From positions 310,001-374,000 of the forward strand of contig OZ251243.1 in the NCBI GenBank assembly GCA_965240325.2: 64,000 bases of DNA, in the 5' to 3' direction. Shown piece by piece: positions 44,635 through 58,103 of the stretch. Below the pieces are notes generated by a model, which worked only from the letters and a program-made list of their open reading frames with translations, was not told the origin of the DNA and made no database searches. A program made the translations under genes and the position numbers. Source of the stretch: Rebecca billardiae RCC1528 (taxonomy: Eukaryota; Protista; Haptophyta). The stretch's first letter is position 1. Every line of letters starts with the position of its first letter.

Positions 44635-45071
44635 TGCGACCCCTCCACCTCGGCGACTCCGAGAGAGAATCGCCGGAGACAACGGCGGCAACGACGACGG
44701 AGGGCGGGCGGCGCCGCGACGGGTGAAGAGCTACTGGCTATTCATCAGATTCAGTCATCAGTGCTCGAATCAGTGATGAATAAAGAGTACTTAAACTTGT
44801 AAACGAGAATGGACCCGGACGTTACTCATCAGCAGCCTGACGACTGACGACTTGATAGAACTACTTACTACTCCCGAGGCGATTTCGATGACGACGACCG
44901 TGATATGATGGAGGTGACGACTTCCCACGATATGATGATGACCGTCAAAAATGCCTGCAGGCAACGCCAACAGCTCGGATCTGCGTCAGCAGGTGCACGC
45001 AGAGAGGGCCGAGTGGAAGACGTGCACAGCGCATGCGCTGCCCGAGCTGCGGCACTCGAACAAGCTCCGTC

Positions 45072-47178
45072 TCACGCTCCGCCGCTCGTGGGGCCGTCGT
45101 CGACGGCGGTCGGCGCGATGGCGACCGGCGCGACGGGCGGCGGCGGTACCGTCACCTCGGCGGGAGGCGGCATGGGCGGCAGCGTCGGGCTGGCGGCTCG
45201 GCCCGAGACGGGCGTCGTGGCGCCGTCGGGGGGCACGTCGCCGTCCACGTCCGCTGCGGCGAGGGCCAGCGGCATGCCCAGCGCGGGCGGCTCCTGCTGC
45301 ACGTCCGAATACGAAAAACCGCTGGCGAGCCTGCGCACGCGCGCCGCGGGCCGCGGGCACGGCGCGCGCGCAGGAGAGAGAGAGGAAAGGCGGCGGCGGC
45401 GCATCGCGTGAGCCCGGCACGCTCGCTTGGTCGTGTGGGGAGCACGCGCCCACGCGCGCGCGCGCGCAGCCCGCCCTTCGGCCTGCACGGCGCTTGGCCT
45501 CCGCGCCTGCGCGCGCGCGCCGCCTGCGCCGCCCGCCTGGCCCTGCAAGCCAGCAGCCATCCTGCCGTCTCGTCGCACCCACCCTCGCCCTCCGCTCCCC
45601 CAGCTCTCCCGCACAGAGGGGCCCGCACCTGTACTCGAGCACGAGCTGCCGCTCGTCCGAGAGATACTCCTGCAGGATGGAGCCCAGGCTGAGGTCGAGC
45701 ATCAGAGAGGGCGGCGGCGGCGGCCGGCCGGCCGTGCCCTCCGTGAGGCGCAGGGAGAGCCTGAACGACGTCCATGCGGACTCCTTGAGCTGCAGCCGGA
45801 GCACGAGGAACTTGAGCACGTGGTGCACCTGCGGTGTGTGTGTGTGTGTGTGTGGCGGGGGAGGAGGCGGGCGGCACGCGGCAGGCGCGGAGGCGGGGCA
45901 GTGAGCGGGCAGGCGGCAGGCGGCGGGCAGCAGGCAGCGGGGGCAGCCGCAGCCGCAGGCAGCGGGGCAGGCAGCAGGCGGCGGGCAGCAGCAGGCAGCG
46001 GGGCAGCGGGCAGACAGCAGGCGGCCGCTCAGCGCGGAGGCCGCGCAAAGCCTCGCAGAGAGCAGGCGCTGCCTCAACGCCTCCGGCGGGCTCTGCCATG
46101 CCGCGCCGCGCGCGCACGCCGGCGCCGCCCGCACCTGCAGCCGGCGCGAGGTCTGCAGCACCTCCTTCTCCAGGTCGCCGAGGAACACCTCCTCCGGGTG
46201 CCGCACCACGGCGAAGGTGACGGAGTCCGGGGCCGCCTCGGTGCCCGCGAGCGCGGGCGCGTGTTGGTCCGAGGCGGCGGCGTGCGCGGGGCGCGGGCGC
46301 TTGCGCTTGCCCGAGCGCGGCGGCGCCGGCCGGCCCGGCGCCGGCTGGAGCAGCGCGTCCGCGCCCTCGTCCTCGTCCGTCAGCTCCTCCTCCTCGCCGC
46401 CGCGCGGCCGGCGGCCCGCGGCCGCCGCCTTCAGTGCAAGTCTTTTGGTGCGCACGGCGGCCTGCGCGCGGAGGATGCGCTCGCGCTGCTGCTTGGCGGC
46501 GAGCTCGCGCTCGTACTCCTCGAGCTCGTGGCGCGAGCGCGCCGCGAGCTGCTCCGCCTGCTTGTGCAGCTGCTCCTCGTGCGCCAGCCGCCGCCTCTCC
46601 AGCTCGCCGTAATTGTCGAGGCACGAGTATTGCTCCAGCTCAAAACCCTCGAGGTCGGGCAGCAGCGCGGCGATGAGCCGGTCGAAGTTGGCGTCGGGGC
46701 GGAGCGAGCGCCGCGTCGCCACGTGCCGCCTGCACGACGGGCACTCCTGCGCGCCGCGCGCGCGCCGGCGAGCGCGTGCGTGCGCGCGTGCGCGCGTGAG
46801 CGAGCGAGCGCCGGGCGCGCGGGGGGAGCCGAGCGCGCTGGCGGCGCGTGCGCGCACCTTCTTGCCCTGGCGCAGGCACTTCTCGATGCAGTTGTGGCAG
46901 AAGCGATGCAGGCACTCCGTCGCCACGGCGTTCTTGAGGATGCTGCGCGCGGCGCCCGCCCGAGGCGCGCGTCAGCGCGGCGTGGCGCACTGCGCGCCTC
47001 GCGCCGCGCCCGCGCGCGCGCACCCTAGGCAGACCGGGCACGAGAGGTCGGCGGCGAGGCTGCTCACGGGGAGCGAGGTCTCGTCCTCCTCATCGCAGAT
47101 GATCGGGTACGGCGCGTCGGCCCCCACGCGCACTTCGCCAGGCCCATGGCGGGCCATCACCGACGAGTGCCTCAGCAT
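45072..47178 (-). CDS. RING1: RING1-type E3 ligase (PRC1) with RAWUL-like domain; introns 46943-47023, 46747-46857, 45829-46134, 45331-45628
   Basis: Spliced [61 protein letters not shown]. C-terminal LQTS..LQVHHVLKFL...LVLEYR. Confidence 0.88.
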
Positions 47179-48173: not shown

Positions 48174-51100
48174 TCACCTGCCGCCGAGCAGCTGCCCGAA
48201 GAGCCCGCTGCCGCAGTGCGCGACCGGCCCGCCGAGCGCAAGCGCGAGCGCCGCCCCCAGCTGCGCCAGCGCCATCACCGGCGGCCCGAGCGCGCAGCGC
48301 ATGACGCACGCAACCTCCGCAATGGCGGCCGCGCCGCCGTCGGCGCCGCCGGCCTCCGCGCCGCCGGCCTCGTCGCAGTCAAAGTCGGCGGGCGCGCTCC
48401 CTGGCCACGCGGCCTGCGGCCCGCCCTCCGCGCCGGGGCCCGCCCCGCCGCCGCCGCCCGCCGCGCCGCCCCACTGCTGCGCCGAGCCCGCCGAGCCGGC
48501 GCGCCCGCGCTCGGGCGGCGCGCCGCCGCCGCCGCCGAGCGCGCTCGCACCGTCCCAGACGGCGGCGGTGGTCGTCGCGCCAAAGGCGACGAGGGCGGCG
48601 GCGACGGCGGTGCCGAGCAGCTGCGCGCACAGCGCGGCGGTGCCGCCGAGCCAGCCCAGCAGCGCCGGTATGAGCAGCGCGCCCGCCGTCGCGGCTCTGA
48701 GCTCCGCGCGCGCGCGCAGCGTGCCCAGCCGCGCGCTGAGTCGAAAATCGGGCGGCGCGTCGTGTAGGGCTCGGGCTAGCCGGGACGCGGTGGCGGCGGC
48801 CGCGGCGTCTGCGCACGAGGCGTCGATGTGCTGCGCGGCGCTCTCGTGCGCGCGGAGGAGGCCGCTCGCGAGCAGCAGCGGCACCGTCGCGCCTACCATC
48901 AGCGCACATGCGCGCACGCCGCCGCCGTCACCGCCGCTGCCACCGCCGCCGCCGCCGCCGCCGGCCGCGCCGGCCGCGTGCGCGCGCACCCCAAGCCCCA
49001 GCAGACTGAGAGCCGCCGCGCCGCCGCGCGCACTCAGGGCGGGCAGGGCCGCGAGCTCGGCGACGGGCGGCGTGGGCGAGGGCGCGAGCCCCGCCTGCGG
49101 CCCAAACGCCGCGTCCAGCGCCGCCACGACCGCCAGCGCACTCAGCAGGCACCCACTGAGTGCATGCGCCGCCGCGGCGCTCCCAGCCGTCGCTGCGGCC
49201 GCGTGAAGTGCGTGCGTGCGCGCGCGCGCCGGCGCCGGCGCGTCGGCGAGCCAGCTGATGGCGTGCGCGCTGCGGGCGCTCGCGGCGAGGGCGGCGTGCG
49301 CGGCGGCGACGGGCGCGGCCATCGTGCCGCCACACGCCGCCAGCGACGCGCCGTACCCGCCGCCAAGCCTGCGGCGGGCGCGCGGCACGACGCGACGCGC
49401 CCCGCGGCGAAGGGGCAGGGCGCGCGGCGGGCGGGCGGCGCGGCGCGGGCGGGCGGCGCGTGGCCGCGGCGGTGAGTGCCAGGGGCGGTGAGGCGCGCTA
49501 GGCCGCGTGCTCGTGCCCGGTGCTCTCGCGCGCAGCACGCGCCCGCGCACTGTGCCCGCGCTGCGCCCGCACCGCGCCCACCCCGCACTCCGTGCCACGT
49601 GCGCGCCGTGCGCCGTGCGCCGTGCGCCGTGCGCCGTGCGCCGTGCGCCGTGCGCCGTGCGCCGTGCGCCGTGCGCCGTGCGCCGTGCGCCGTGCGCCGT
49701 GCGCCGTGCGCCGTGCGCCGTGCGCCGTGCGCCGTGCGCCGTGCGCCGTGCGCCGTGCGCCGTGCGCCGTGCGCCGTGCGCCGTGCGCCGTGCGCCGTGC
49801 GCCGTGCGCCGTGCGCCGTGCGCCGTGCGCCGTGCGCCGTGCGCCGTGCGCCGTGCGCCGTGCGCCGTGCGCCGTGCGCCGTGCGCCGTGCGCCGTGCGC
49901 CGTGCGCCGTGCGCCGTGCGCCGTGCGCCGTGCGCCGTGCGCCGTGCGCCGTGCGCCGTGCGCCGTGCGCCGTGCGCCGTGCGCCGTGCGCCGTGCGCCG
50001 TGCGCCGTGCGCCGTGCGCCGTGCGCCGTGCGCCGTGCGCCGTGCGCCGTGCGCCGTGCGCCGTGCGCCGTGCGCCGTGCGCCGTGCGCCGTGCGCCGTG
50101 CGCCGTGCGCCGTGCGCCGTGCGCCGTGCGCCGTGCGCCGTGCGCCGTGCGCCGTGCGCCGTGCGCCGTGCGCCGTGCGCCGTGCGCCGTGCGCCGTGCG
50201 CCGTGCGCCGTGCGCCGTGCGCCGTGCGCTGTGCGCCGTGCCGTGTGCGCTGTGTGGCCCAGTGCGCCTCCTTCCTCGCTCAGAACGGGATCAACCAAAT
50301 GCATGTCTCCGCACCGAGTGGCCTCTCGGAGGTGTATGCGGCTCCTCACCGCGAGGAGGCACAGGGCGGCCAGCGCCACACACCGCGCCCGCGCCCGCGC
50401 CCACACCCACACCCGCGCCCCCCCTTGTGCGCCGCCCTCACCGCCAAGGCGCCCCCCCCCCAGCGCGCGCTCGGCCGCGCGCCCCAGCGCTCGCTCACGA
50501 GGCCGGGGCCTTGGCTTTGCTCGCGCCGCCGCGCGCGGCCCCAGGCGCGCGCGCCGACGCTCGCGCGCGCGCGCATGCCGCACGCACCGCGCGCTCACAA
50601 ACACCGCCGCTAGCACCACCGCACCCGCCAGCGCGAGCGACCCACCCGCCGCCGCGACAGCCTGCAGCAGCGCGGCCGCGCCGCCGTGCGCAACCGCCGC
50701 GGCCGCGGCCCGGCGCGCGCTCGAGCGCGCGGGCGAGGCGGCGCGCGTCGCGACGGCGGCGACCAGAACGCCCGCCCAGATACCACAGAGCACGCAAAGC
50801 GCTCCGTGCCTGCGCGCGGCGCGCGTGCCCAATTTCAAAGCACAAGAAAAGAATAGAATGGGAATTGGGGGGGCGCGCGCGCAGCGGCGCGCGGCGCGGT
50901 GAGAGAGCGCCGCCGCCGTGCGCAGCGCAGGACGACACCACCGCCGCACGCTCCCCGCCGCCAGCGCACGCGGCACGCCCGGCGCGCGCACACGCCCCGC
51001 GCCGCGCCGCAGCCCCGCGCCGCGCCGCGCCGCGCGCACCAGTAGGCAAGGCCGTGCCAGCCGCCCGCGTCGAAGCCCGCTGCGGGCAGCAGCCAGCGGC

Positions 51101-52626
51101 ACAGCGCGGCTGCAACTGCGGAGCAGAGCATGCCGGCGATCACGCGCTCCGCCGTCATCAGCGCCTCGGCGTCCGCGCGCGCGCGCACCGTCCGCGCGCA
51201 CCGCCCCAGGCACGCGGAGACGAGCGCGCACGCCAGCGTGCCGCCGGCGCCGAGCGCGGGCGGCAGCAGCATTGGTCCGGCCCAGACACGCGGCGCGGCC
51301 GCCGCCGCCGCCGGTGCCACTCGGCCGCCCGCCGCCGCCTCCGCGTGCGTGCTCACCACGCTCGCGGCGATCAGCATGGCGGAGCAGGTGGCCCCGAGCC
51401 GAGCGCTCAGCAGGATCAGCGCGTGCCCGGCGCCGCTGGTCGCGTGCTCGCCGACGAGGGCGGCGATGAGGGCAGGCGCGCGCGGGTCGGGGCCCGAGCC
51501 GGGCGTGGGCAGCGAGGCTGCTGAGCTGCTGGCCGCCTCCGCGCCGCGCGCCGCGCCCAGCCGCAGCAGCTCGGCGCGCGCGACGCGCCGCGCCGCCACG
51601 GCCGCGCCGCTCGCCAGCGGCCCAGCCCCCGTGTGCACGAGGGCGCTCACCAGCGCGCCGCCCAGTGCTAGGCCCGCGCTCGCGTAGGCAAGATGGGTCG
51701 CCGAGCTGCGCGCGGCGCTCTGGGCCGCCTGCTGCGCTGCCGCCGGCGCGAGCTCGGACGCCGCCGCGCCGCCTCCCAGCGCCGCGTACCCGCCTCTAGA
51801 CAGGCCCCAGCCTGCTCTGTAGTCATCCGCGCCGTGGCCCGAACCGGCGGCCATGCTGATCGGGGCTGCCATGCTGATCGGGGCGGCGGCGCCAGTCCGG
51901 TAGTGCAGGTGCAGGACTCCGAGCGTGGCGCAGAGGCCGAGGAGCTCGAGCGCGGAGGTGGCGAAGGCGGTGATCGCGCCGCCTTGCGCGGCGGCGGCGA
52001 GCGCGGGCGCGAGGCCCGCCTGCGCCTGCAGCGCGCTGCGGGACGCAGAGGCCGTGGCGGCACGGAGGCCTACCAGCGCGCACGCGCTGCCGACCGCGAC
52101 GCCGACGCCAACCGCGGCGCCCTGCAGCACGCCGCACGCCCAGCCGCCGTCGCTGTACACCCCGACGAGCACGACCAGCGCGAGGCTGAGCAGCGCGCTC
52201 GCCGGCAGCACGTGCAGCGCCTGCACGCCGAGGTGCGCGCGCTCGGCCTCGCTCAGTGCGTAGCTCGCATCCCACACCTGCGCGGCGGCCGATCGGCGGG
52301 CGAGCGACGGCGGCGCGAAGGGCGGTGTGACACGGCGGGGACGGCGCGCGCGCACGAGAGGCGCCCGCGCACGGCGAGCGGCGCGCGCGCGGCGGCGCGC
52401 GCGCCCGTCGGGCGCCCCGAGCGCGCGCGGCGCCTCTCACCCGCTGCCGCACGTCCACGTCCGGAGCGAGGGACGAGTGGATGCCGGCGTCGCTCGTGGG
52501 GTCGTTCTCGATGAGCGAGAGCTGCCAGTACCGCCACCCCGTGTACAGCGCCGCGGCGAGCATCGCGCACACCAGCAGGGCCGCGACGGCGCCGGGCGCG
52601 AGTGCCTGAGGCTGATGCGACGGCAT
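48174..52626 (-). CDS. Divergent membrane H+-pyrophosphatase-like protein lacking catalytic motifs; introns 52278-52440, 50810-51039, 49369-50587
   Basis: Collinear with V-PPase: GLALGGALVSAL, DPRAPALIA, WHGALCVLCGIWAGVLV, YGASLAA, ALHAAAAT, AVWDGA and LGPPVMAL. The frame stays open after splicing. Confidence 0.75.
49603..50229. repeat. Perfect heptamer satellite (GTGCGCC)n, ~89 copies, intronic
   Basis: Uninterrupted cgccgtg units inside intron 49369-50587. Confidence 0.97.
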
Positions 52627-53344
52627 CGCGATCTCGCCCTGCGCGGCCGCTGCTTCGGTCCTCGCTCGCCTCTGCTAGCTCTCCAGCCGTCCTGGTCAGT
52701 GCCGAAACCGAGGAGTGACGACCAGACGACGTCCGACGACGACGACGAGGGCTGGGCAACTCCGCTTCCGAATTCACTCAGAAAGCTGTGGATGTGAGCG
52801 CTCTTTTTGCGTGTATTGCCATATGTTTTGGGCACTTTTGCCACACAATCATGCTGGCATCGCAACTTCGTCGCGTGACGCGTTCGACTACCGCGGATCA
52901 GCAGTTCAGCACGGTCCCAACTCGTTGAGATCGGTGCCGTGTGACGAGACGAGCGTACCTCTGCGCACTGCCGCGATGCCGCCACCGGGACTGTCGCCGG
53001 AACAAGCTTTGCGCGATGCAAAGCCGTTATGATGCGCCTTACGTAGTTTCAGTTTGTCCCGCGTTCTGAGGAGTGTCTGCGGGCACACGGACTCGAGGGC
53101 ACGTGGCTCAATCCGACAAGCTGCCTGCCTTCACGGCAGGAGCTGGGCAGCCGGGCACGGGCCCAGAAGCGCCCGAACACTTTGCACGAGCGCGGGCAAG
53201 CCCGCCCGTCGCGCGCCAGATCGGCCGCAGCCGTGATGAAGACTCGAGAGCCGCCCGAGCAGACCGCTGCTATCCGAGCGACACGTCTCGAGCGCGCTGG
53301 AACCCAGGCCGCAGCCCGCCGGTCTGCGGGTCTGCGTGCGGGCT

Positions 53345-53626
53345 CTACTGGCCGACGATGGTGAAATCAGGCGTGTCCTTCACGAGCGACATGGGGTCCA
53401 CGGCGTACGGCGGCGGCTTGCGGTTCTTGTCCGCGAGCGAGTGCTTCTTTGGGCGGCGGTCCGTGTGCTTCTTGGTCGCCTTCTTGTTGACGTGGTGCGC
53501 CATCTCGACGGCGAGCGGGCGGACGGCCGATCGGCCGACGCAGCGCGACGTGTGCGCCGCGGGTGCGAACGCAGCCGCGCCTGCGAGCGCGCAGAGGAGC
53601 ACGAGAAGCCGCAGCACCGACGCCAT
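53345..53626 (-). CDS. PSRP6: Plastid-targeted PSRP6 (cL38)-like ribosomal protein
   Basis: Signal peptide plus AAA-FAP transit start. Mature HVNKKATKKH..RRPKKH...DKNRKPPPY resembles the PSRP6 KK.T.HH...RPKK...D..RKP..Y pattern. Confidence 0.7.
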   Translation of the reverse strand: MASVLRLLVLLCALAGAAAFAPAAHTSRCVGRSAVRPLAVEMAHHVNKKATKKHTDRRPKKHSLADKNRKPPPYAVDPMSLVKDTPDFTIVGQ

Positions 53627-53888
53627 CTCCTCCACGTGCTGATGAAGCACAGCAAGCACCGGCCGCGAAGGCGCAGCGCTCCTCTCAAGCGTGGGCCACG
53701 AGATCAGCCGAGGGCAGTCCGGAAGCTTCTTTCAGCACGCAGTGGTCCGGTTGGGCTGTGCCGGTGGGTCCGGAGTTCCGGGCAGCCAGCGGCCAGGCGC
53801 GCGGTGGCGAGCGGAGGCCCAGCGGGAGAGCGCGAAGTCGTTGGCCGCGCGCGCTCTCACATCGCGCCGCGGGCCCGCGAGGCGCGGC

Positions 53889-54856
53889 ATGCCGCAGTAC
53901 CACTTCGGCGCGGTGACCGTCGACTTCCCGTACGACGCGTACGACTGCCAGGTCGTGTACATGCGCAAGGTCGTGGAGGCGCTGCAGGAGTGCTCGAACG
54001 CGCTGCTCGAGAGCCCGACCGGGACGGGCAAGACGCTCTGCCTGCTGTGCGCGACGCTCGGCTGGCGGCAGGCGATGCTCGAGGGGCGCGCGCAGCCGCT
54101 GCACGTGGGCGCCGCCGCGCACGCCGCGCTGCCGCCGCCGCCCGGCGCCGACGGCGGTGCGCGCGCCGACGCGGCGTCCGGCTGCGGCGGCTGCGGCTGC
54201 GGCGGCGCCGCCGACGCGGCGGCGCGGCGCGCGACGCCGCGCATCGTGTACGCGAGCCGCACGCACAGCCAGCTGGCGCAGGTGGTGAGCGAGCTGCGCC
54301 GCACGAGCTACCGCCCGAAGATGTGCGTCTTCGGCGCGCGCGACCAGTCGTGCGTGCACCCGGAGGTGTCCGAGCTCCGAGGCATGGCGCTCACGCATGC
54401 GTGCCAGGCGCTCACCAAGGCGGGCGGGTGCAAGTACCACGCGAACCTGATGCGGCAGAAGGCGTCGCCGCACGGCGTGCCGGTGCACCCGGGCATCCTC
54501 GACATCGAGGAGTTCGGCGCGCTCGCCAAGTCGAAGGAGCTCTGCCCCTTCTACTACGCGCGCGAGCTGCAGGGAGATGCCGATCTCGTGTTTGTTCCGT
54601 ATAACTATTTGATCGACCCGAAGGTGCGCTCGGCGCTGGGGCTGAGCTCGGCGCGCGACGTGCTGATCTTCGACGAGGCGCACAACATCGAGCGCGTCTG
54701 CACCGACGCGGCGAGCATCGAGATCACCTCCACCACGCTCGCGCACGCCGTCGGCGAGGTGGACCGGTGCGTTCGCATCGCCGAGCGGGAGCGCGGCGCG
54801 GGCGGCGCGGCGGGGGACGCGGCCGCCGACGCCGACGCGGTGCTCGGCGGCGCGGC

Positions 54857-54890
<34 letters not shown>

Positions 54891-57800
54891 GTGCTGCTGC
54901 CCATGCACGTGCTCGGCGGGCTCAAGAAGCTGCTCCTCAATCTCGAGCGGGAGATCTGCGCGCTGCCGCTCAGCCCCCGTGACGGCACGCTCACACGGCC
55001 GGGCGGCGCGCTCGCCGAGCTGCTGGCGCGCGTCGGCGTGACGGCGCAGACGCGCGACGAGCTGCTCGGCGCGCTGAGCAAGGCGACGCAGATGCTCGCG
55101 GGCGCGATGCAGCACGTCGGCGGGCTGCAGTCCAGCGGGCTGCACGCGCTCGCCGACGCGGTGCGCGTGGTGCTCGGCGGCGACCACGACTCGGCCGACT
55201 TCAAAGTGCATGTGAGCGCGGGCGCCGAGGGCGGCGGCGGCGGCGGCGGCGGCGGGTACGGCGGCGGGCGGGGCGGCGGCGGCGGCTCGGAGCGCGGCGC
55301 GCCGGCGCGCACGCTCGCGTACTGGTGCCTCAACCCGGGCGTCGCGATGCTCGAGCTCGTCAAGGCGTCGTCCGCCCATTCGCTCATCCTCACGTCGGGC
55401 ACGCTCTCCCCGCTGCCCTCTTGCGCGTCCGAGCTGAGGCTGCCGTTTCGGGTGCGGCTGGAGAACGAGCACGTGATCGGGGCGGGGCAGGCGCTGGTGG
55501 CGGTGGTGAAGCGCGGGCCCGCCGGCGCGCCGCTCAACTCGAGCTACGCCAACCGCTCCACCGCCGCGTACCTCTCCGACCTGGGCAACGCCGTCGTCAA
55601 CTTCTCGAGGCTCGTCCCAGACGGGATGCTGGTGTTCTTCCCGTCGTATGCGGCGCTGGAGGAGGCGGTGCGGCACTGGCAGGGGCGCGGTGGCGGCGGG
55701 GGCGGCGCGGGGGCCGCCGGCGCGGACGGCGCGGACAGCGTGTGGCGCCGGCTCGCGCGCTTCAAGCACGTGGTCGTCGAGCCGCGCGGCTCGCAGGCCG
55801 CGCTGAACGGCGCGTGCGCCGAATTCAACGCGGCGCTCGACTCCGGCCGTGGGGCAGTGTTTCTGGCGGTGTGCCGCGGCAAGCTGAGCGAGGGGATCGA
55901 CTTTGCGGACCGCGCGGGGCGCGCGGTCGTGGTGACGGGCCTGCCGCTCCCGCCGTTCAAAGACCCGAAGGTCGCTCTCAAGCGACAGTACCTGGACGAG
56001 CGGCGCCGAGCGCACGCGCGCGGCGCGGCGGGCGCGGCGCACGGCGGCGCGGCGCGCGGCGGCGCGTGCGCGGACGCGTGCGCGGAGAGCCCGCTGAGCG
56101 GCGAGGAGTGGTACACGCAGCAGGGCATGCGCGCGATCAACCAGGCCGTCGGCCGCGTCATCCGACACCGCCACGACTACGGCGCCGTCCTGCTCTGCGA
56201 CGAGCGCTTCGAGCAGCCGCGCTTCCGAGCGGCGCTCTCCCACTGGCTGAGGCCGGCGCTGCGCGTGTGCTCGTCATTCGGCGAGGTGAGCGGCGCGCTC
56301 GCGGGCTTCTACAAGGCGCAGCGCGCGCGCGAGGCGGCGGGCGGCGGCGGGTGCGGCAAGCCCAGGCCGCCGCCCGAGCACGCCGCGCCCGACGCCGCCG
56401 CCGCCGCCGCGCTCGAGCCCGGCGCGGCCGCGCCGCCGCCCAGCCTCGGCGCCGTGCGATCCGTTGCCCATCCCGACACTTTTTGCGGAGGCGGCGGCAC
56501 GGCCGTGGCGCTCGTGGAGCAGCTCGCGCGCGCGCGCGGCGCGGGGCAGCTCGGCGCGCCGCACGAGCGCGCGCCGCTCACGCTGCAGGGCGTGCTCGCC
56601 GCGAGCAACAGCGCCGCGCAGGGCGTGGGCGGCGCGCAGCGGCCGCCGCTGCCGCCGCCGCCGCAGCAGCAGCAGCAGCAGCCGCACCGCGCGGCGGGCG
56701 GCTTGGCGGGCGGGCTGGGTGGCGGCAGGAGCGGCGGCGAGCCCACGCCCGAGCCGCGCGCCGCGTGCGACGGCAGTGCGTACACTGCGCTGCGCCGCGC
56801 CAAGCTCGCGCAAACGCGCGAGCAAGCCGCAGCAGCCACAACCGCCGCCGCCGCCGCCGCCGTGCCCGCGGCCGGTGCGCTCACGCCGCCGGCGGGCGGC
56901 GCTCAGCGCGCGGCGCGCGGCGCGTGCGCGGGCGTCGAGAGCGTGCCGCTTGACCCGGACACGCCGGAGGAGGAGGAGGAGCCCGCGCGCGCGGAGCGGC
57001 GCGCGGCGGCCGCGGCGGCCGCTCCCGCCTCTGCGGCAGCGGCGGCCGGCGGCGCGGCGGGTGGCGACAGCGGCGGCGGGTGGCGGCAGCGTTCGCACGC
57101 GCCGCCGGGCGGCGGCGCGCCGGCCGTTCCGCGCCCGCCCGGACTCAACGTCAAGCTGTGGGTCGGGCTGCAGGGCGCGCTCGGCGGCGCCGAGCTCGGC
57201 GCACTGGCAGCGCTGCTCGGCCGCGCGCGCCATCTCGAGCTGAGCGCAGCGGCAGCGGCAGCAGCAGCGGCAGCGCCGGCCGCAGCGCCGGCCGCCGCCG
57301 CAGCAGCAGCCGCCGCCGCCGCCGCAGCAGCAGCAGCAGCAGCAGCAGCAGCACCGGCGGCGGTGCCTGTGGCGGCCGGCGGCGACGGCGTCCGCGGCGG
57401 CGCGCGCTCCGCAGCCCACGGCCCCGCGCCGCGCGGCGCGCCCGAGCCCGCGCCCAGCGCTGGGCGCGCCGCCGAGCCCGCCGCAGAGGCGTCCGCCATC
57501 GCTCGCGGACTTTTTGCCCTCCTCCGGACGCCCGCGGCGCGCCGGCCGCTCCTGGAGCAGCTGGGCGCGGGCGCGCACCTCCCGCTCGCAGTGCGCGAGC
57601 GGCTGCGCGCGCTCTCGCAGCGCGAGGGGGCAGCGGCGCCCGCCAACCGGCCCGCTGCCGGTGCCGCCGACGCGGGCTCGGCGGACAAGGCCGCGGCCAG
57701 CGCGCGCTTCCTCGAGGGGGTCAAAGCTGAACTGAGCCGAGACGAGTACGCGCGAATGAAGGCGCTGCTGCTCCGCGCGCGCAGGCCCAGGCAGCCCGCG

Positions 57801-58103
57801 CTCGCGCCGGCGGCGGCGGGGGCGGCGTGCGGCGGCGGCGGTCCGGAGGCGGAGGCGGAGGAGGCCGCTGAGCTCGCCGCCGCCCTGCACGCTCTCTTTG
57901 CGCCCTACCCGAGCTGGCGAGCCCAGCTGCGCTCCGTGCTGCCCAAGCGGCTGCGCGCGCCCTTCGATCGGCTGGGCGGCGGCGGCGCGGGCGCGGGCTC
58001 GACCGGCCAGACGGCCGGCCGCCGGCCGAGGCCGACGGTGGAGTACGAGGGCGCACCAGGCGGCGACGGGGCGCGGCCGAGCAGCAAGCGCGCAGCAAGA
58101 TGA
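53889..58103 (+). CDS. RTEL1: Regulator of telomere elongation helicase 1 (XPD-family Fe-S helicase)
   Basis: VDFPYDAYDCQ, LESPTGTGKTLCLLCATL, YASRTHSQL, FDEAHN, AVCRGKLSEGIDFAD and RAINQAVGRVIRHRHDYGA. Harmonin-like FLEGVKAELSRDEY near the C-terminus. Confidence 0.93.

What the first reader, a model, noticed from the sequence alone, without database searches (positions are those of the whole stretch)
48174..52626. Intact H+-PPase paralogue with its catalytic motifs neutralised (pseudoenzyme)
Seen: a four-exon frame stays open and follows V-PPase along its length. Known motifs versus what is here: [11 protein letters not shown] -> [20 protein letters not shown] -> ALVGEHATS; LDAAGNT -> LHAAAAT; WDNAKK -> WDGASA; GDTIGDPLKD -> AEVACVMRC. 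Selective loss of Mg/PPi-binding Asp/Lys with the TM scaffold, frame and splice sites retained argues against simple decay. Inference: a repurposed channel, scaffold or regulatory partner that dimerises with active PPase.
Basis: partly seen in the sequence, partly recalled or inferred. Interest (0 to 1): 0.7.

Follow-up and report, generated by a model that had tools for sequence, protein, structure and literature searches.

The report
Catalytically dead membrane pyrophosphatase gene
A very GC-rich alga carries a four-exon gene that is clearly derived from the proton-pumping membrane pyrophosphatase but has lost nearly every residue needed to split pyrophosphate or move ions. Its reading frame, splice sites and membrane-protein character are kept, so it looks like a non-enzymatic membrane protein rather than plain wreckage, though expression and function are untested.

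Summary
On the minus strand, 52626-48174, a four-exon, 941-codon open frame is colinear with membrane H+-PPases. Support comes from Pfam PF03030 (30.8-32.2 bits on exon 2, cutoff 29.7), from PDB hits to 4AV3/4A01, and from tblastn with a canonical relative, which hits only these four exons (E 9e-20 to 5e-3). That relative (L001, a Logan contig) has all motifs intact and the same three intron positions and phases.

In the window gene, 3 of 40 key polar residues of the hydrolytic centre and ion gate survive, so PPi hydrolysis and pumping are very unlikely.

Asp/Glu/Lys/Asn are lost at the rate a neutral GC-biased simulation predicts (0.15 observed, 0.18 expected), and Phe/Tyr/Met/Ile are lost just as often.

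What departs from neutrality:
- No stops (about 6-9 expected).
- About 20 indels, all in frame.
- GT-AG kept at all three introns.
- Coding-type GC periodicity.
- Arg and Pro at half the neutral level.
- Hydropathy profile r = 0.78 (neutral 0.51).

No orthologue, no RNA evidence and no view of a canonical copy in this genome were obtainable. The channel and heterodimer ideas remain speculation. I read it as a probable pseudoenzyme-like membrane protein, and a recently silenced relic is not excluded.

The parts
52441..52626 (-). Exon 1: ATG, TM1 and the loop motif IENDPTSD...VRQR. Donor is CGG|GTGAGA.
   Evidence: tblastn HSP to canonical residues 6-62, 40% identity, E 1.6e-9. The intron position is identical to L001.
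52278..52440 (-). Intron 1 (163 nt, GT..AG, phase 0). Its length is not a multiple of 3, so splicing is needed to join exon 1 to exon 2.
   Evidence: GC 0.865 with no codon periodicity (0.85/0.91/0.85).
51040..52277 (-). Exon 2 (1238 nt): TM2-TM8 equivalents, including the dead TM5 and TM6 motifs.
   Evidence: Pfam PF03030 30.8 bits. tblastn E 9e-20 and 7e-10 in one frame. AF2 pLDDT 71 with Foldseek top hits 5GPJ/4A01/4AV3.
51570..51638 (-). Dead TM5 motif: canonical [23 protein letters not shown] reads [23 protein letters not shown] here.
   Evidence: checked against the sequence.
51393..51506 (-). Dead loop 5-6/TM6 motif and gate. Canonical [34 protein letters not shown] reads TP..DPRAPALIAALVGEHATSGAGHALILLSARLG here. 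The gate changes are D->I, S->A and E->G.
51846..51887 (-). In-frame 18-bp tandem duplication (2.3 copies) encoding APISMA repeats, inside a 43-residue loop insertion.
50810..51039 (-). Intron 2 (230 nt, GTGCGC..CAG, phase 2). The donor context TACTG|GTGCGC is the same as in L001.
50603..50809 (-). Exon 3 (207 nt): TM9-TM10 equivalents. TEYYTS reads ATRAAS. The frame requires the donor GT|GTTTGT, not the GTGAGC 4 nt downstream.
   Evidence: frame test. (E 3.6e-5). L001 has its intron at the same position and phase.
49369..50602 (-). Intron 3 (1234 nt, GT..AG, phase 2). It holds a (GCGCCGT)x91 microsatellite at 49603-50241.
48174..49368 (-). Exon 4 (1195 nt including TGA): TM11-TM16 equivalents with dead motifs. 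DAYGPISDNAGGIAEM reads AALAASARSAHAISWL, LDAAGNTTAAIGKG reads LHAAAATAGSAAAA (49143-49217), WDNAKK reads WDGASA (48537-48575). The C-terminal D/K motif and gate read AAIAEVACVMRCALGPPVMALAQL (48258-48329).
   Evidence: Pfam 17.7 bits. 4A01 E 0.012. tblastn E 6e-9 and 5e-3.. The AF2 model of this half alone is poor (pLDDT 58.7).
52627..53888 (.). Lower-GC (about 0.65) spacer shared head-to-head with an RTEL1-like helicase gene. It is a putative bidirectional promoter region.
   Evidence: The promoter function is inferred, not tested.

Best explanation
This is a frame-maintained, intron-bearing gene derived from a K+-dependent-type H+-translocating membrane pyrophosphatase (M-PPase). It shares all three intron positions and phases and a lineage-specific N-terminal motif with a canonical, motif-intact relative.

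Shown: it encodes a 941-residue, Ala/Gly/Leu-rich polytopic membrane protein that keeps the hydropathy pattern of the 16-helix M-PPase scaffold. The Asp/Lys/Asn residues of the hydrolytic centre and all five ion-gate residues have been replaced, mostly by Ala, Gly, Ser, Arg or apolar residues.

Inferred: it cannot bind Mg2-PPi, hydrolyse PPi or pump H+/Na+.

Shown by statistics, not by expression data: its sequence has drifted under strong GC-biased pressure, with selection acting on only two things. One is keeping the frame open and spliceable. The other is keeping helices hydrophobic and free of Arg and Pro.

Inferred, weakly: the product acts as a non-catalytic membrane protein of the M-PPase fold, a pseudoenzyme. 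If it has a role, the most plausible one is as an inert scaffold or partner subunit, not as a channel.
For: Homology and colinearity.

Same exon-intron structure as canonical L001 (introns after canonical residues 61, 375 and 448; same phases; same TACTG|GTGCGC donor).

Loss of catalysis: 3 of 40 key polar positions are kept, and the gate reads D->I, S->A, E->G, N->M, K->Q. Their roles are taken from PMC5150537.

Evidence for coding constraint:
- 0 stops, against 6.1+-2.2 in the neutral simulation and 8.6 expected from composition (P about 2e-4). The other five frames have 4-18 stops.
- About 20 gap events against the canonical protein, all in frame, and each exon's HSPs stay in one frame.
- GC1/2/3 of 0.81/0.675/0.908, like the neighbouring helicase gene, against flat introns.
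- Arg 5.4% and Pro 4.3% against 11.5% and 10.5% neutral. Ala 28.8% and Leu 14.8% against 15.9% and 7.2% neutral.
- Smoothed hydropathy correlation of 0.78, against 0.51+-0.07 in the neutral simulation and -0.02+-0.15 for circular shifts.
- AT-richer intergenic DNA bounds the unit on both sides.
- The exon 2 model matches solved M-PPases at TMq 0.46-0.56.
Against: - No RNA run was listed for this stretch, so transcription and the three splice junctions are unconfirmed.
- No orthologue was found. The exhaustive HMMER search gave only six hits, all canonical and at most 30% identical. Two JGI metagenome scans found nothing. Purifying selection could therefore not be measured between species.
- Pairwise dN 0.87 / dS 1.21 against the canonical relative is saturated. 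Taken at face value it is close to neutral.
- 65% of family-invariant columns have changed, including many Gly, Phe and Tyr in helices. Retention by residue class is close to the neutral GC-biased expectation.
- The C-terminal half folds poorly on its own.
- The exon 2 model was built on an alignment of canonical enzymes, so its fold match is partly circular.
- Exon 3 needs a weaker donor (GTTTGT) than the nearby GTGAGC, which would break the frame.
Confidence: 0.6

Rival explanations
1. It is a recently silenced relic. The copy was kept as a coding gene for most of its divergence, which explains the frame and hydropathy. It is now unexpressed or non-functional and has simply not yet acquired a stop, frameshift or splice lesion.
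For: - No RNA holder was listed.
- No orthologue was found anywhere.
- The branch is enormous, about 10 substitutions per site, and cannot be placed on the tree.
- Residue retention by class is near the neutral expectation.
- Low-complexity insertions total 213 residues.
- The required exon 3 donor is weak.
Against: There is no disabling lesion in 2.8 kb, and the ATG, the TGA and all GT-AG pairs are intact. GC3 (0.91) is still above the intron level and GC2 (0.675) is well below it. Arg and Pro are still at half the neutral level. A long-dead copy is excluded, but a young one is not.
Confidence: 0.28
2. It is a non-catalytic partner subunit. The dead protein would heterodimerise with the canonical M-PPase and modulate it through the inter-subunit coupling known for these obligate dimers.
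For: M-PPases are homodimers in which motions at helices 10 and 13 couple the protomers (PMC5150537; the titles and abstracts of PMC10897367 and PMC6530997). The scaffold hydropathy is kept. This is a sub-case of the best explanation.
Against: Nothing here tests it. By eye, the interface-helix equivalents (TM10, TM13) are no better conserved than the rest, and TM10 carries a 5-residue deletion. The best-conserved part is TM1-TM4, which is outer ring and, from my own knowledge of the fold, not the dimer interface. A canonical partner in the same genome was not seen. No multimer modelling tool was available, and the joined model was not to be submitted.
Confidence: 0.1
3. It is a chance open frame. 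On this reading, GC-rich DNA merely mimics an Ala-rich membrane protein and there is no real gene or homology.
For: At about 80% GC, ORFs of 200-680 codons occur in all six frames here. Ala-rich queries give spurious tblastn hits of E 1e-14 on unrelated Ala-rich tails when composition correction is off.
Against: A canonical query of normal composition hits only these exons, in order, at the canonical intron positions. HMMER with bias correction passes the Pfam cutoff. Specific strings are shared, such as DPR.PA.IA..VG, SR.ALQAQ.GL and YWH..CVLCG.W.G.
Confidence: 0.01
4. It is still an enzyme or transporter with altered chemistry, using a re-built active site.
For: A few polar residues remain (E298, D322 and D816 in model numbering). 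New His residues appear at former Asp or Arg sites (R->H, D->H twice).
Against: 37 of 40 key polar positions are lost, there is no Lys in the whole protein and only one Asn, and the gate is apolar. There is no sign of a conserved new motif, because no relatives exist to compare.
Confidence: 0.01

Closest known systems
K+-dependent H+-translocating membrane pyrophosphatases (Pfam PF03030; Vigna radiata VrH+-PPase 4A01/5GPJ, plant AVP1 type). The nearest sequence is the canonical gene on Logan contig L001 (P0001).
   Same: Full-length colinear homology at 28-30% identity, and the same three intron positions and phases as L001. The N-terminal ENDPTSD..VWD.S.A.SE motif is shared. The hydropathy profile correlates at r 0.78, and the N-terminal half is predicted to match the solved fold.
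   Different: The hydrolytic-centre Asp/Lys/Asn and ion-gate residues are almost all replaced (3 of 40 kept). The protein has no Lys, is 29.5% Ala, and carries 213 inserted, mostly low-complexity residues. Its branch is about 20-40 times longer than those of canonical members.
Pseudoenzymes with a polytopic membrane-enzyme fold, for example iRhoms and Derlins, the inactive rhomboid-protease relatives. This comparison is from my own knowledge and was not tested here.
   Same: The concept is the same: the membrane scaffold of an enzyme family is kept while the catalytic residues are lost. Those proteins act as regulators or adaptors.
   Different: iRhoms and Derlins are widely conserved, under clear purifying selection, and have known partners. 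This gene has no known orthologue, no expression data and near-neutral residue turnover.
Unprocessed (duplicated) pseudogenes.
   Same: The copy retains its introns, has lost function-critical residues, evolves very fast and shows GC-biased drift of its composition.
   Different: There is no stop, frameshift or splice-site lesion after more than one substitution per neutral site. Composition and hydropathy deviate from the neutral simulation by 3-6 SD.

Membership tests
Membrane-bound pyrophosphatase (M-PPase, Pfam PF03030 H_PPase) | Sequence match to the family profile above the curated cutoff | tested here: met
Exon 2 scores 30.8 bits, and its ORF 32.2 bits, against a cutoff of 29.7. Exon 4 scores 17.7-18.1 bits, which is below the cutoff but colinear.
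Membrane-bound pyrophosphatase (M-PPase, Pfam PF03030 H_PPase) | 16-transmembrane-helix fold with inner and outer helix rings | tested here: inconclusive
   Hydropathy correlates at r 0.78 with the canonical protein. The exon 2 half has pLDDT 71 and its top 36 Foldseek hits are all M-PPases at TMq 0.46-0.56, but it was modelled on a canonical MSA. The exon 4 half has pLDDT 58.7 and only weak matches.
Membrane-bound pyrophosphatase (M-PPase, Pfam PF03030 H_PPase) | Conserved Asp/Lys/Asn of the hydrolytic centre that bind Mg2+ and PPi and activate the nucleophilic water (PMC5150537) | tested here: not met
   3 of 40 key polar positions are identical. DVGADLVGK reads [18 protein letters not shown] reads ALVGEHATS, DAAGNTT..GK reads HAAAATA..AA and WDNAKK reads WDGASA.
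Membrane-bound pyrophosphatase (M-PPase, Pfam PF03030 H_PPase) | Ion gate: D6.50, S6.54, E6.53/6.57, D/N16.46, K16.50 (PMC5150537) | tested here: not met
   D->I, S->A, E->G, N->M, K->Q.
Membrane-bound pyrophosphatase (M-PPase, Pfam PF03030 H_PPase) | PPi hydrolysis coupled to H+/Na+ transport, and a homodimeric state | not testable with these tools
   This needs expression and assay.
Pseudoenzyme (non-catalytic homologue kept by selection) | Homologous to an enzyme family but lacking its catalytic residues | tested here: met
Pseudoenzyme (non-catalytic homologue kept by selection) | Expressed and under purifying selection | tested here: inconclusive
   Indirect support comes from the open frame, in-frame indels, codon periodicity, Arg/Pro depletion and hydropathy retention against a neutral simulation. 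There is no RNA evidence. There are no orthologues for dN/dS, and the pairwise dN/dS is saturated.
Unprocessed pseudogene | Disabling lesions: premature stop, frameshift, or lost start or splice site | tested here: not met
   None is present in 2826 nt or at the six splice sites.

The most novel reading that the evidence does not exclude
This would be the first non-catalytic member of the membrane pyrophosphatase family. A dead 16-helix subunit would be kept by selection and would pair with the active pump, or sit in the same membrane. It would tune PPi-driven acidification through the inter-subunit coupling that makes M-PPases obligate, asymmetric dimers.
Probability: 0.1. Interest if true: 0.75.

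Novelty: new variant of a known kind. Interest (0 to 1): 0.45.

Why it matters
M-PPases are studied as stress-tolerance determinants in plants and as drug targets in protists. Their half-of-the-sites, asymmetric dimer mechanism is an active question (titles and abstracts listed).

I found no paper describing a catalytically dead family member. A naturally dead subunit that still folds and dimerises would be a ready-made tool for testing inter-subunit coupling. It would also add a primary ion pump to the list of enzyme folds recycled as pseudoenzymes.

If it is only a slowly dying duplicate, it is still a clean example of a different effect. Extreme GC-biased drift can turn a well-conserved pump into a 30%-Ala, lysine-free protein while the reading frame and hydropathy survive. 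That is a caution for automatic annotation, which would label this gene an H+-PPase.

Tried and rejected
1. RNA evidence: the look-up of sequencing runs listed no run, so read laying could not be used.
2. Word-index protein search with exon 2 found nothing.
3. Exhaustive HMMER search with exon 2 gave only six canonical fragments and no orthologue.
4. Two JGI metagenome scans, with exon 2 and exon 4, found no relatives.
5. Phylogeny: the dead copy sits on a branch of about 10 substitutions per site with deviant composition and cannot be placed. I draw no conclusion on the time of duplication from the tree.
6. dN/dS against L001: NG86 gave 0.87/1.21 and YN00 failed. The estimate is saturated, so I did not use it as evidence.
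7. Synteny: the nearest RTEL1 relatives (61-62% identity; L002, L003) have short flanks with no PPase-like gene. L003 has a different upstream neighbour.
8. tblastn with the Ala-rich model without composition correction gives spurious hits of E 1e-14 on Ala-rich tails. I rely only on searches where the query has normal composition or where bias correction is on.
9. 'Selective loss of Asp/Lys' is rejected after the class-wise retention count and the neutral simulation.
10. 'Channel' is rejected as unlikely because the gate and funnel residues became apolar.
11. The GTGAGC donor for exon 3 is rejected because it breaks the frame. The homologous L001 intron has the phase that fits GT|GTTTGT.
12. 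Not done, by rule: the joined 941-residue spliced model was never sent to a search, family-scan or folding tool. There is therefore no whole-protein Pfam score, full-length fold or heterodimer model. The joined model was used only inside local scripts for alignment, composition and simulation.
Full report
WHAT IS THERE

The region is about 80% GC, and ORFs of hundreds of codons are open in all six frames. An open frame alone therefore means little. I read the minus strand and tested splice combinations. This gave one model with no internal stop:

- Exon 1: 52626-52441, ATG to CGG|GTGAGA.
- Exon 2: 52277-51040.
- Exon 3: 50809-50603.
- Exon 4: 49368-48174, ending in TGA.

The total is 2826 nt, or 941 codons plus stop. 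All three introns are GT..AG. Intron 1 is 163 nt, which is not a multiple of three, so exon 1 can join exon 2 only by splicing. Exon 3 needs the donor GT|GTTTGT, because the GTGAGC four bases further on breaks the frame. Intron 3 carries a 639-bp (GCGCCGT)x91 microsatellite.

HOMOLOGY

- Pfam H_PPase (PF03030) scores 32.2 bits on the exon 2 ORF and 30.8 bits on exon 2 alone, against a cutoff of 29.7. It scores 17.7-18.1 bits on exon 4. The profile positions are colinear: 26-137, then 376-593.
- phmmer against solved structures finds the Thermotoga Na+-PPase 4AV3 and the Vigna H+-PPase 4A01. One aligned pair is DPRAPALIAALVGEHATSGAG against [21 protein letters not shown].
- Language-model features return H_PPase clusters for both large exons, at 0.89 and 0.82.

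A CANONICAL RELATIVE WITH THE SAME GENE STRUCTURE

The exhaustive HMMER search with exon 2 returned only six proteins at E <= 1e-3, and all are canonical fragments. The best is P0001 (E 3e-15, 29% identity). It lies on a 5.2-kb Logan contig, L001, from run SRR30664515.

L001 encodes a motif-intact, K+-dependent-type H+-PPase (GNTTAAIGKG) in four exons. Its three introns lie at the same positions and phases as mine:

- After ..R(H/Q)(K/R) and before VWD.
- Inside the Trp codon of ..YW|H, with the identical donor context TACTG|GTGCGC.
- In a split codon just before L(A/G)G(M/G)YG.

The two proteins also share a lineage-specific N-terminal string, (I/V)ENDPTSD.G...SLA.D.D(I/V)R..VWD.S.A(I/L)SE. 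The next-best relatives whose sequences I read (P0002-P0006) lack this string, and most other hits to P0001 cover only about 62-79% of it.

I ran tblastn with the L001 protein, which has normal composition, against the whole 64-kb window. It gave six colinear minus-strand HSPs that fall exactly in the four exons and break at the canonical intron positions. The E-values are 1.6e-9, 9e-20, 7e-10, 3.6e-5, 5e-3 and 6e-9. Nothing else scored below E 0.2.

IS IT CATALYTICALLY DEAD?

I aligned the model with L001 and 49 full-length canonical enzymes. Residue roles are taken from PMC5150537.

| Region | Canonical | This gene |
|---|---|---|
| TM5 | [23 protein letters not shown] | [23 protein letters not shown] |
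| Loop 5-6 / TM6 | [33 protein letters not shown] | PDPRAPALIAALVGEHATSGAGHALILLSARLG |
| TM9 region | TEYYTS | ATRAAS |
| TM11 | DAYGPISDNAGGIAEM | AALAASARSAHAISWL |
| TM12 | TDALDAAGNTTAAIGKG | THALHAAAATAGSAAAA |
| TM15 | WDNAKK | WDGASA |
| TM16 | [22 protein letters not shown] | AEVACVMRCALGPPVMALAQL |

- Of 40 key Asp/Glu/Lys/Asn/Arg/Ser positions, 3 are identical and 3 are conservatively replaced.
- The five gate residues have become Ile, Ala, Gly, Met and Gln.
- The whole protein has no Lys and one Asn, and it is 29.5% Ala.

Loss of PPi hydrolysis and of the canonical ion path is a strong inference.

IS THE LOSS SELECTIVE? NO.

At columns at least 90% conserved in canonical enzymes, only 93 of 267 residues are kept. 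Retention follows codon GC content:

- GC-rich codons: Gly .49, Ala .61, Pro .60, Leu .52, Arg .75.
- AT-containing codons: Asp .19, Glu .25, Lys 0, Asn 0, Tyr 0, Phe .12, Met .11, Ile .20.

I ran a neutral simulation that evolves the L001 coding sequence toward the base composition of this gene's own introns until 30% identity. It predicts retention of .18 for D/E/K/N, against .15 observed, and .13 for F/Y/M/I, against .08 observed. The catalytic residues behave as unconstrained sites. They were not specifically targeted.

IS ANYTHING CONSTRAINED? YES.

- **Stops.** There are none. The simulation expects 6.1+-2.2 in 746 codons, and composition predicts 8.6 in 941 codons (P about 2e-4). The other five frames have 4-18 stops.
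- **Frame.** There are about 20 gap events against the canonical protein, adding 213 residues and removing 18. All are in frame, and each exon's HSPs stay in a single frame. Neutral sites have seen more than one substitution each (dS at least 1.2). By inference, a neutral copy would have lost its frame many times over.
- **Codon periodicity.** GC1/2/3 is .81/.675/.908, like the neighbouring helicase ORF at .80/.62/.92. The three introns are flat at about .79-.91 in every phase.
- **Composition.** Arg is 5.4% and Pro 4.3%, against 11.5% and 10.5% in the simulation. Ala is 28.8% and Leu 14.8%, against 15.9% and 7.2%. The other frames of the same DNA are 8-34% Arg and only 4-10% hydrophobic.
- **Hydropathy.** The smoothed profile correlates with the canonical one at r .78. 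Circular shifts give -.02+-.15 and the neutral simulation gives .51+-.07. At non-identical positions r is .33, against .195+-.05 neutral.
- **Gene boundaries.** The unit is bounded by AT-richer spacers of .60-.65 GC on both sides.

Taken together, the frame has been translated and inserted in a membrane for most of its divergence. I cannot tell whether it still is.

STRUCTURE

- Exon 2, on an alignment of canonical sequences, gave pLDDT 71. Its best 36 Foldseek hits are all M-PPases (5GPJ, 4A01, 4AV3 and others; TMq .46-.56). This result is partly circular.
- Exon 4 gave only pLDDT 58.7 and weak M-PPase matches at E .24.
- The low-confidence stretches coincide with the low-complexity insertions.

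RELATIVES AND ORGANISM

- Earlier notes of this scan call the genome a very GC-rich haptophyte of the Pavlovales. I did not verify this.
- The window's own RTEL1-like protein (53889-58100, +) is not in the protein collection. Its nearest relatives are 61-62% identical and sit on short Logan contigs with no PPase-like gene in their flanks.
- The lineage is therefore poorly sampled. Finding no orthologue is weak evidence that the gene is young.
- The tree cannot place the copy, which sits on a branch of about 10 substitutions per site.
- I could not check whether this genome also holds a canonical M-PPase, so 'paralogue' is unproven. L001 may belong to another species: its GC1/GC2 are .61/.46, though its GC3 of .87 is similar.

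FUNCTION

- A leak channel is unlikely because the funnel and gate have become apolar.
- A partner-subunit role is conceivable because M-PPases are obligate dimers with coupled protomers. Nothing here tests it, and by eye the interface-helix equivalents are not better conserved than the rest.
- The best-conserved part is TM1-TM4 plus the N-terminal loop.

VERDICT

My estimates:

- Non-catalytic M-PPase-fold membrane protein kept by weak, scaffold-level selection: about 0.6. The partner-subunit idea (about 0.1) is a sub-case of this.
- Recently silenced relic: about 0.28.
- Chance open frame or still-active enzyme: about 0.01 each.

No paper in the searchable library describes a dead M-PPase.

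Noticed in passing
window 49603-50241: A near-perfect (99%) heptanucleotide microsatellite, (GCGCCGT)x91 and 639 bp long, sits inside intron 3 of the PPase-like gene. It makes this intron about 4 times longer than its counterpart in L001 (278 nt).
   Followed up: partly
window 53889-58100 (+): A single long ORF encodes an RTEL1-type DEAD_2/ARCH/Helicase_C_2 helicase with a long Ala/Gly-rich tail. It lies head-to-head with the PPase-like gene across a 1.26-kb spacer of lower GC. Its nearest database relatives are only 61-62% identical (Logan contigs), and its own sequence is absent from the protein collection.
   Followed up: partly
L001:2137-4821 and L001:808-1566: Logan contig SRR30664515_55219 carries a canonical four-exon H+-PPase whose N-terminal loop motif and intron positions match the window gene. 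A Bestrophin_2 gene lies upstream on the opposite strand. The nearest other H+-PPases are only about 58-65% identical, so this organism is also poorly sampled.
   Followed up: partly
window 51846-51887: An 18-bp in-frame tandem duplication (2.3 copies, 91% match) encodes APISMA-APISMA inside a loop insertion. This looks like recent triplet-compatible slippage within the coding frame.
   Followed up: no
L002:2900-4400 and L003:3100-4580: The Ala-rich tails of the RTEL1 relatives give tblastn E-values down to 1e-14 with the Ala-rich PPase-like model in several frames when composition correction is off. This is a purely compositional artefact worth remembering for this genome.
   Followed up: yes
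window 44986-46926 (-): The ORF downstream of the PPase-like gene has a marginal RING-finger (zf-C3HC4) match of 20.5 bits, against a cutoff of 21. Its gene structure was not worked out.
   Followed up: no
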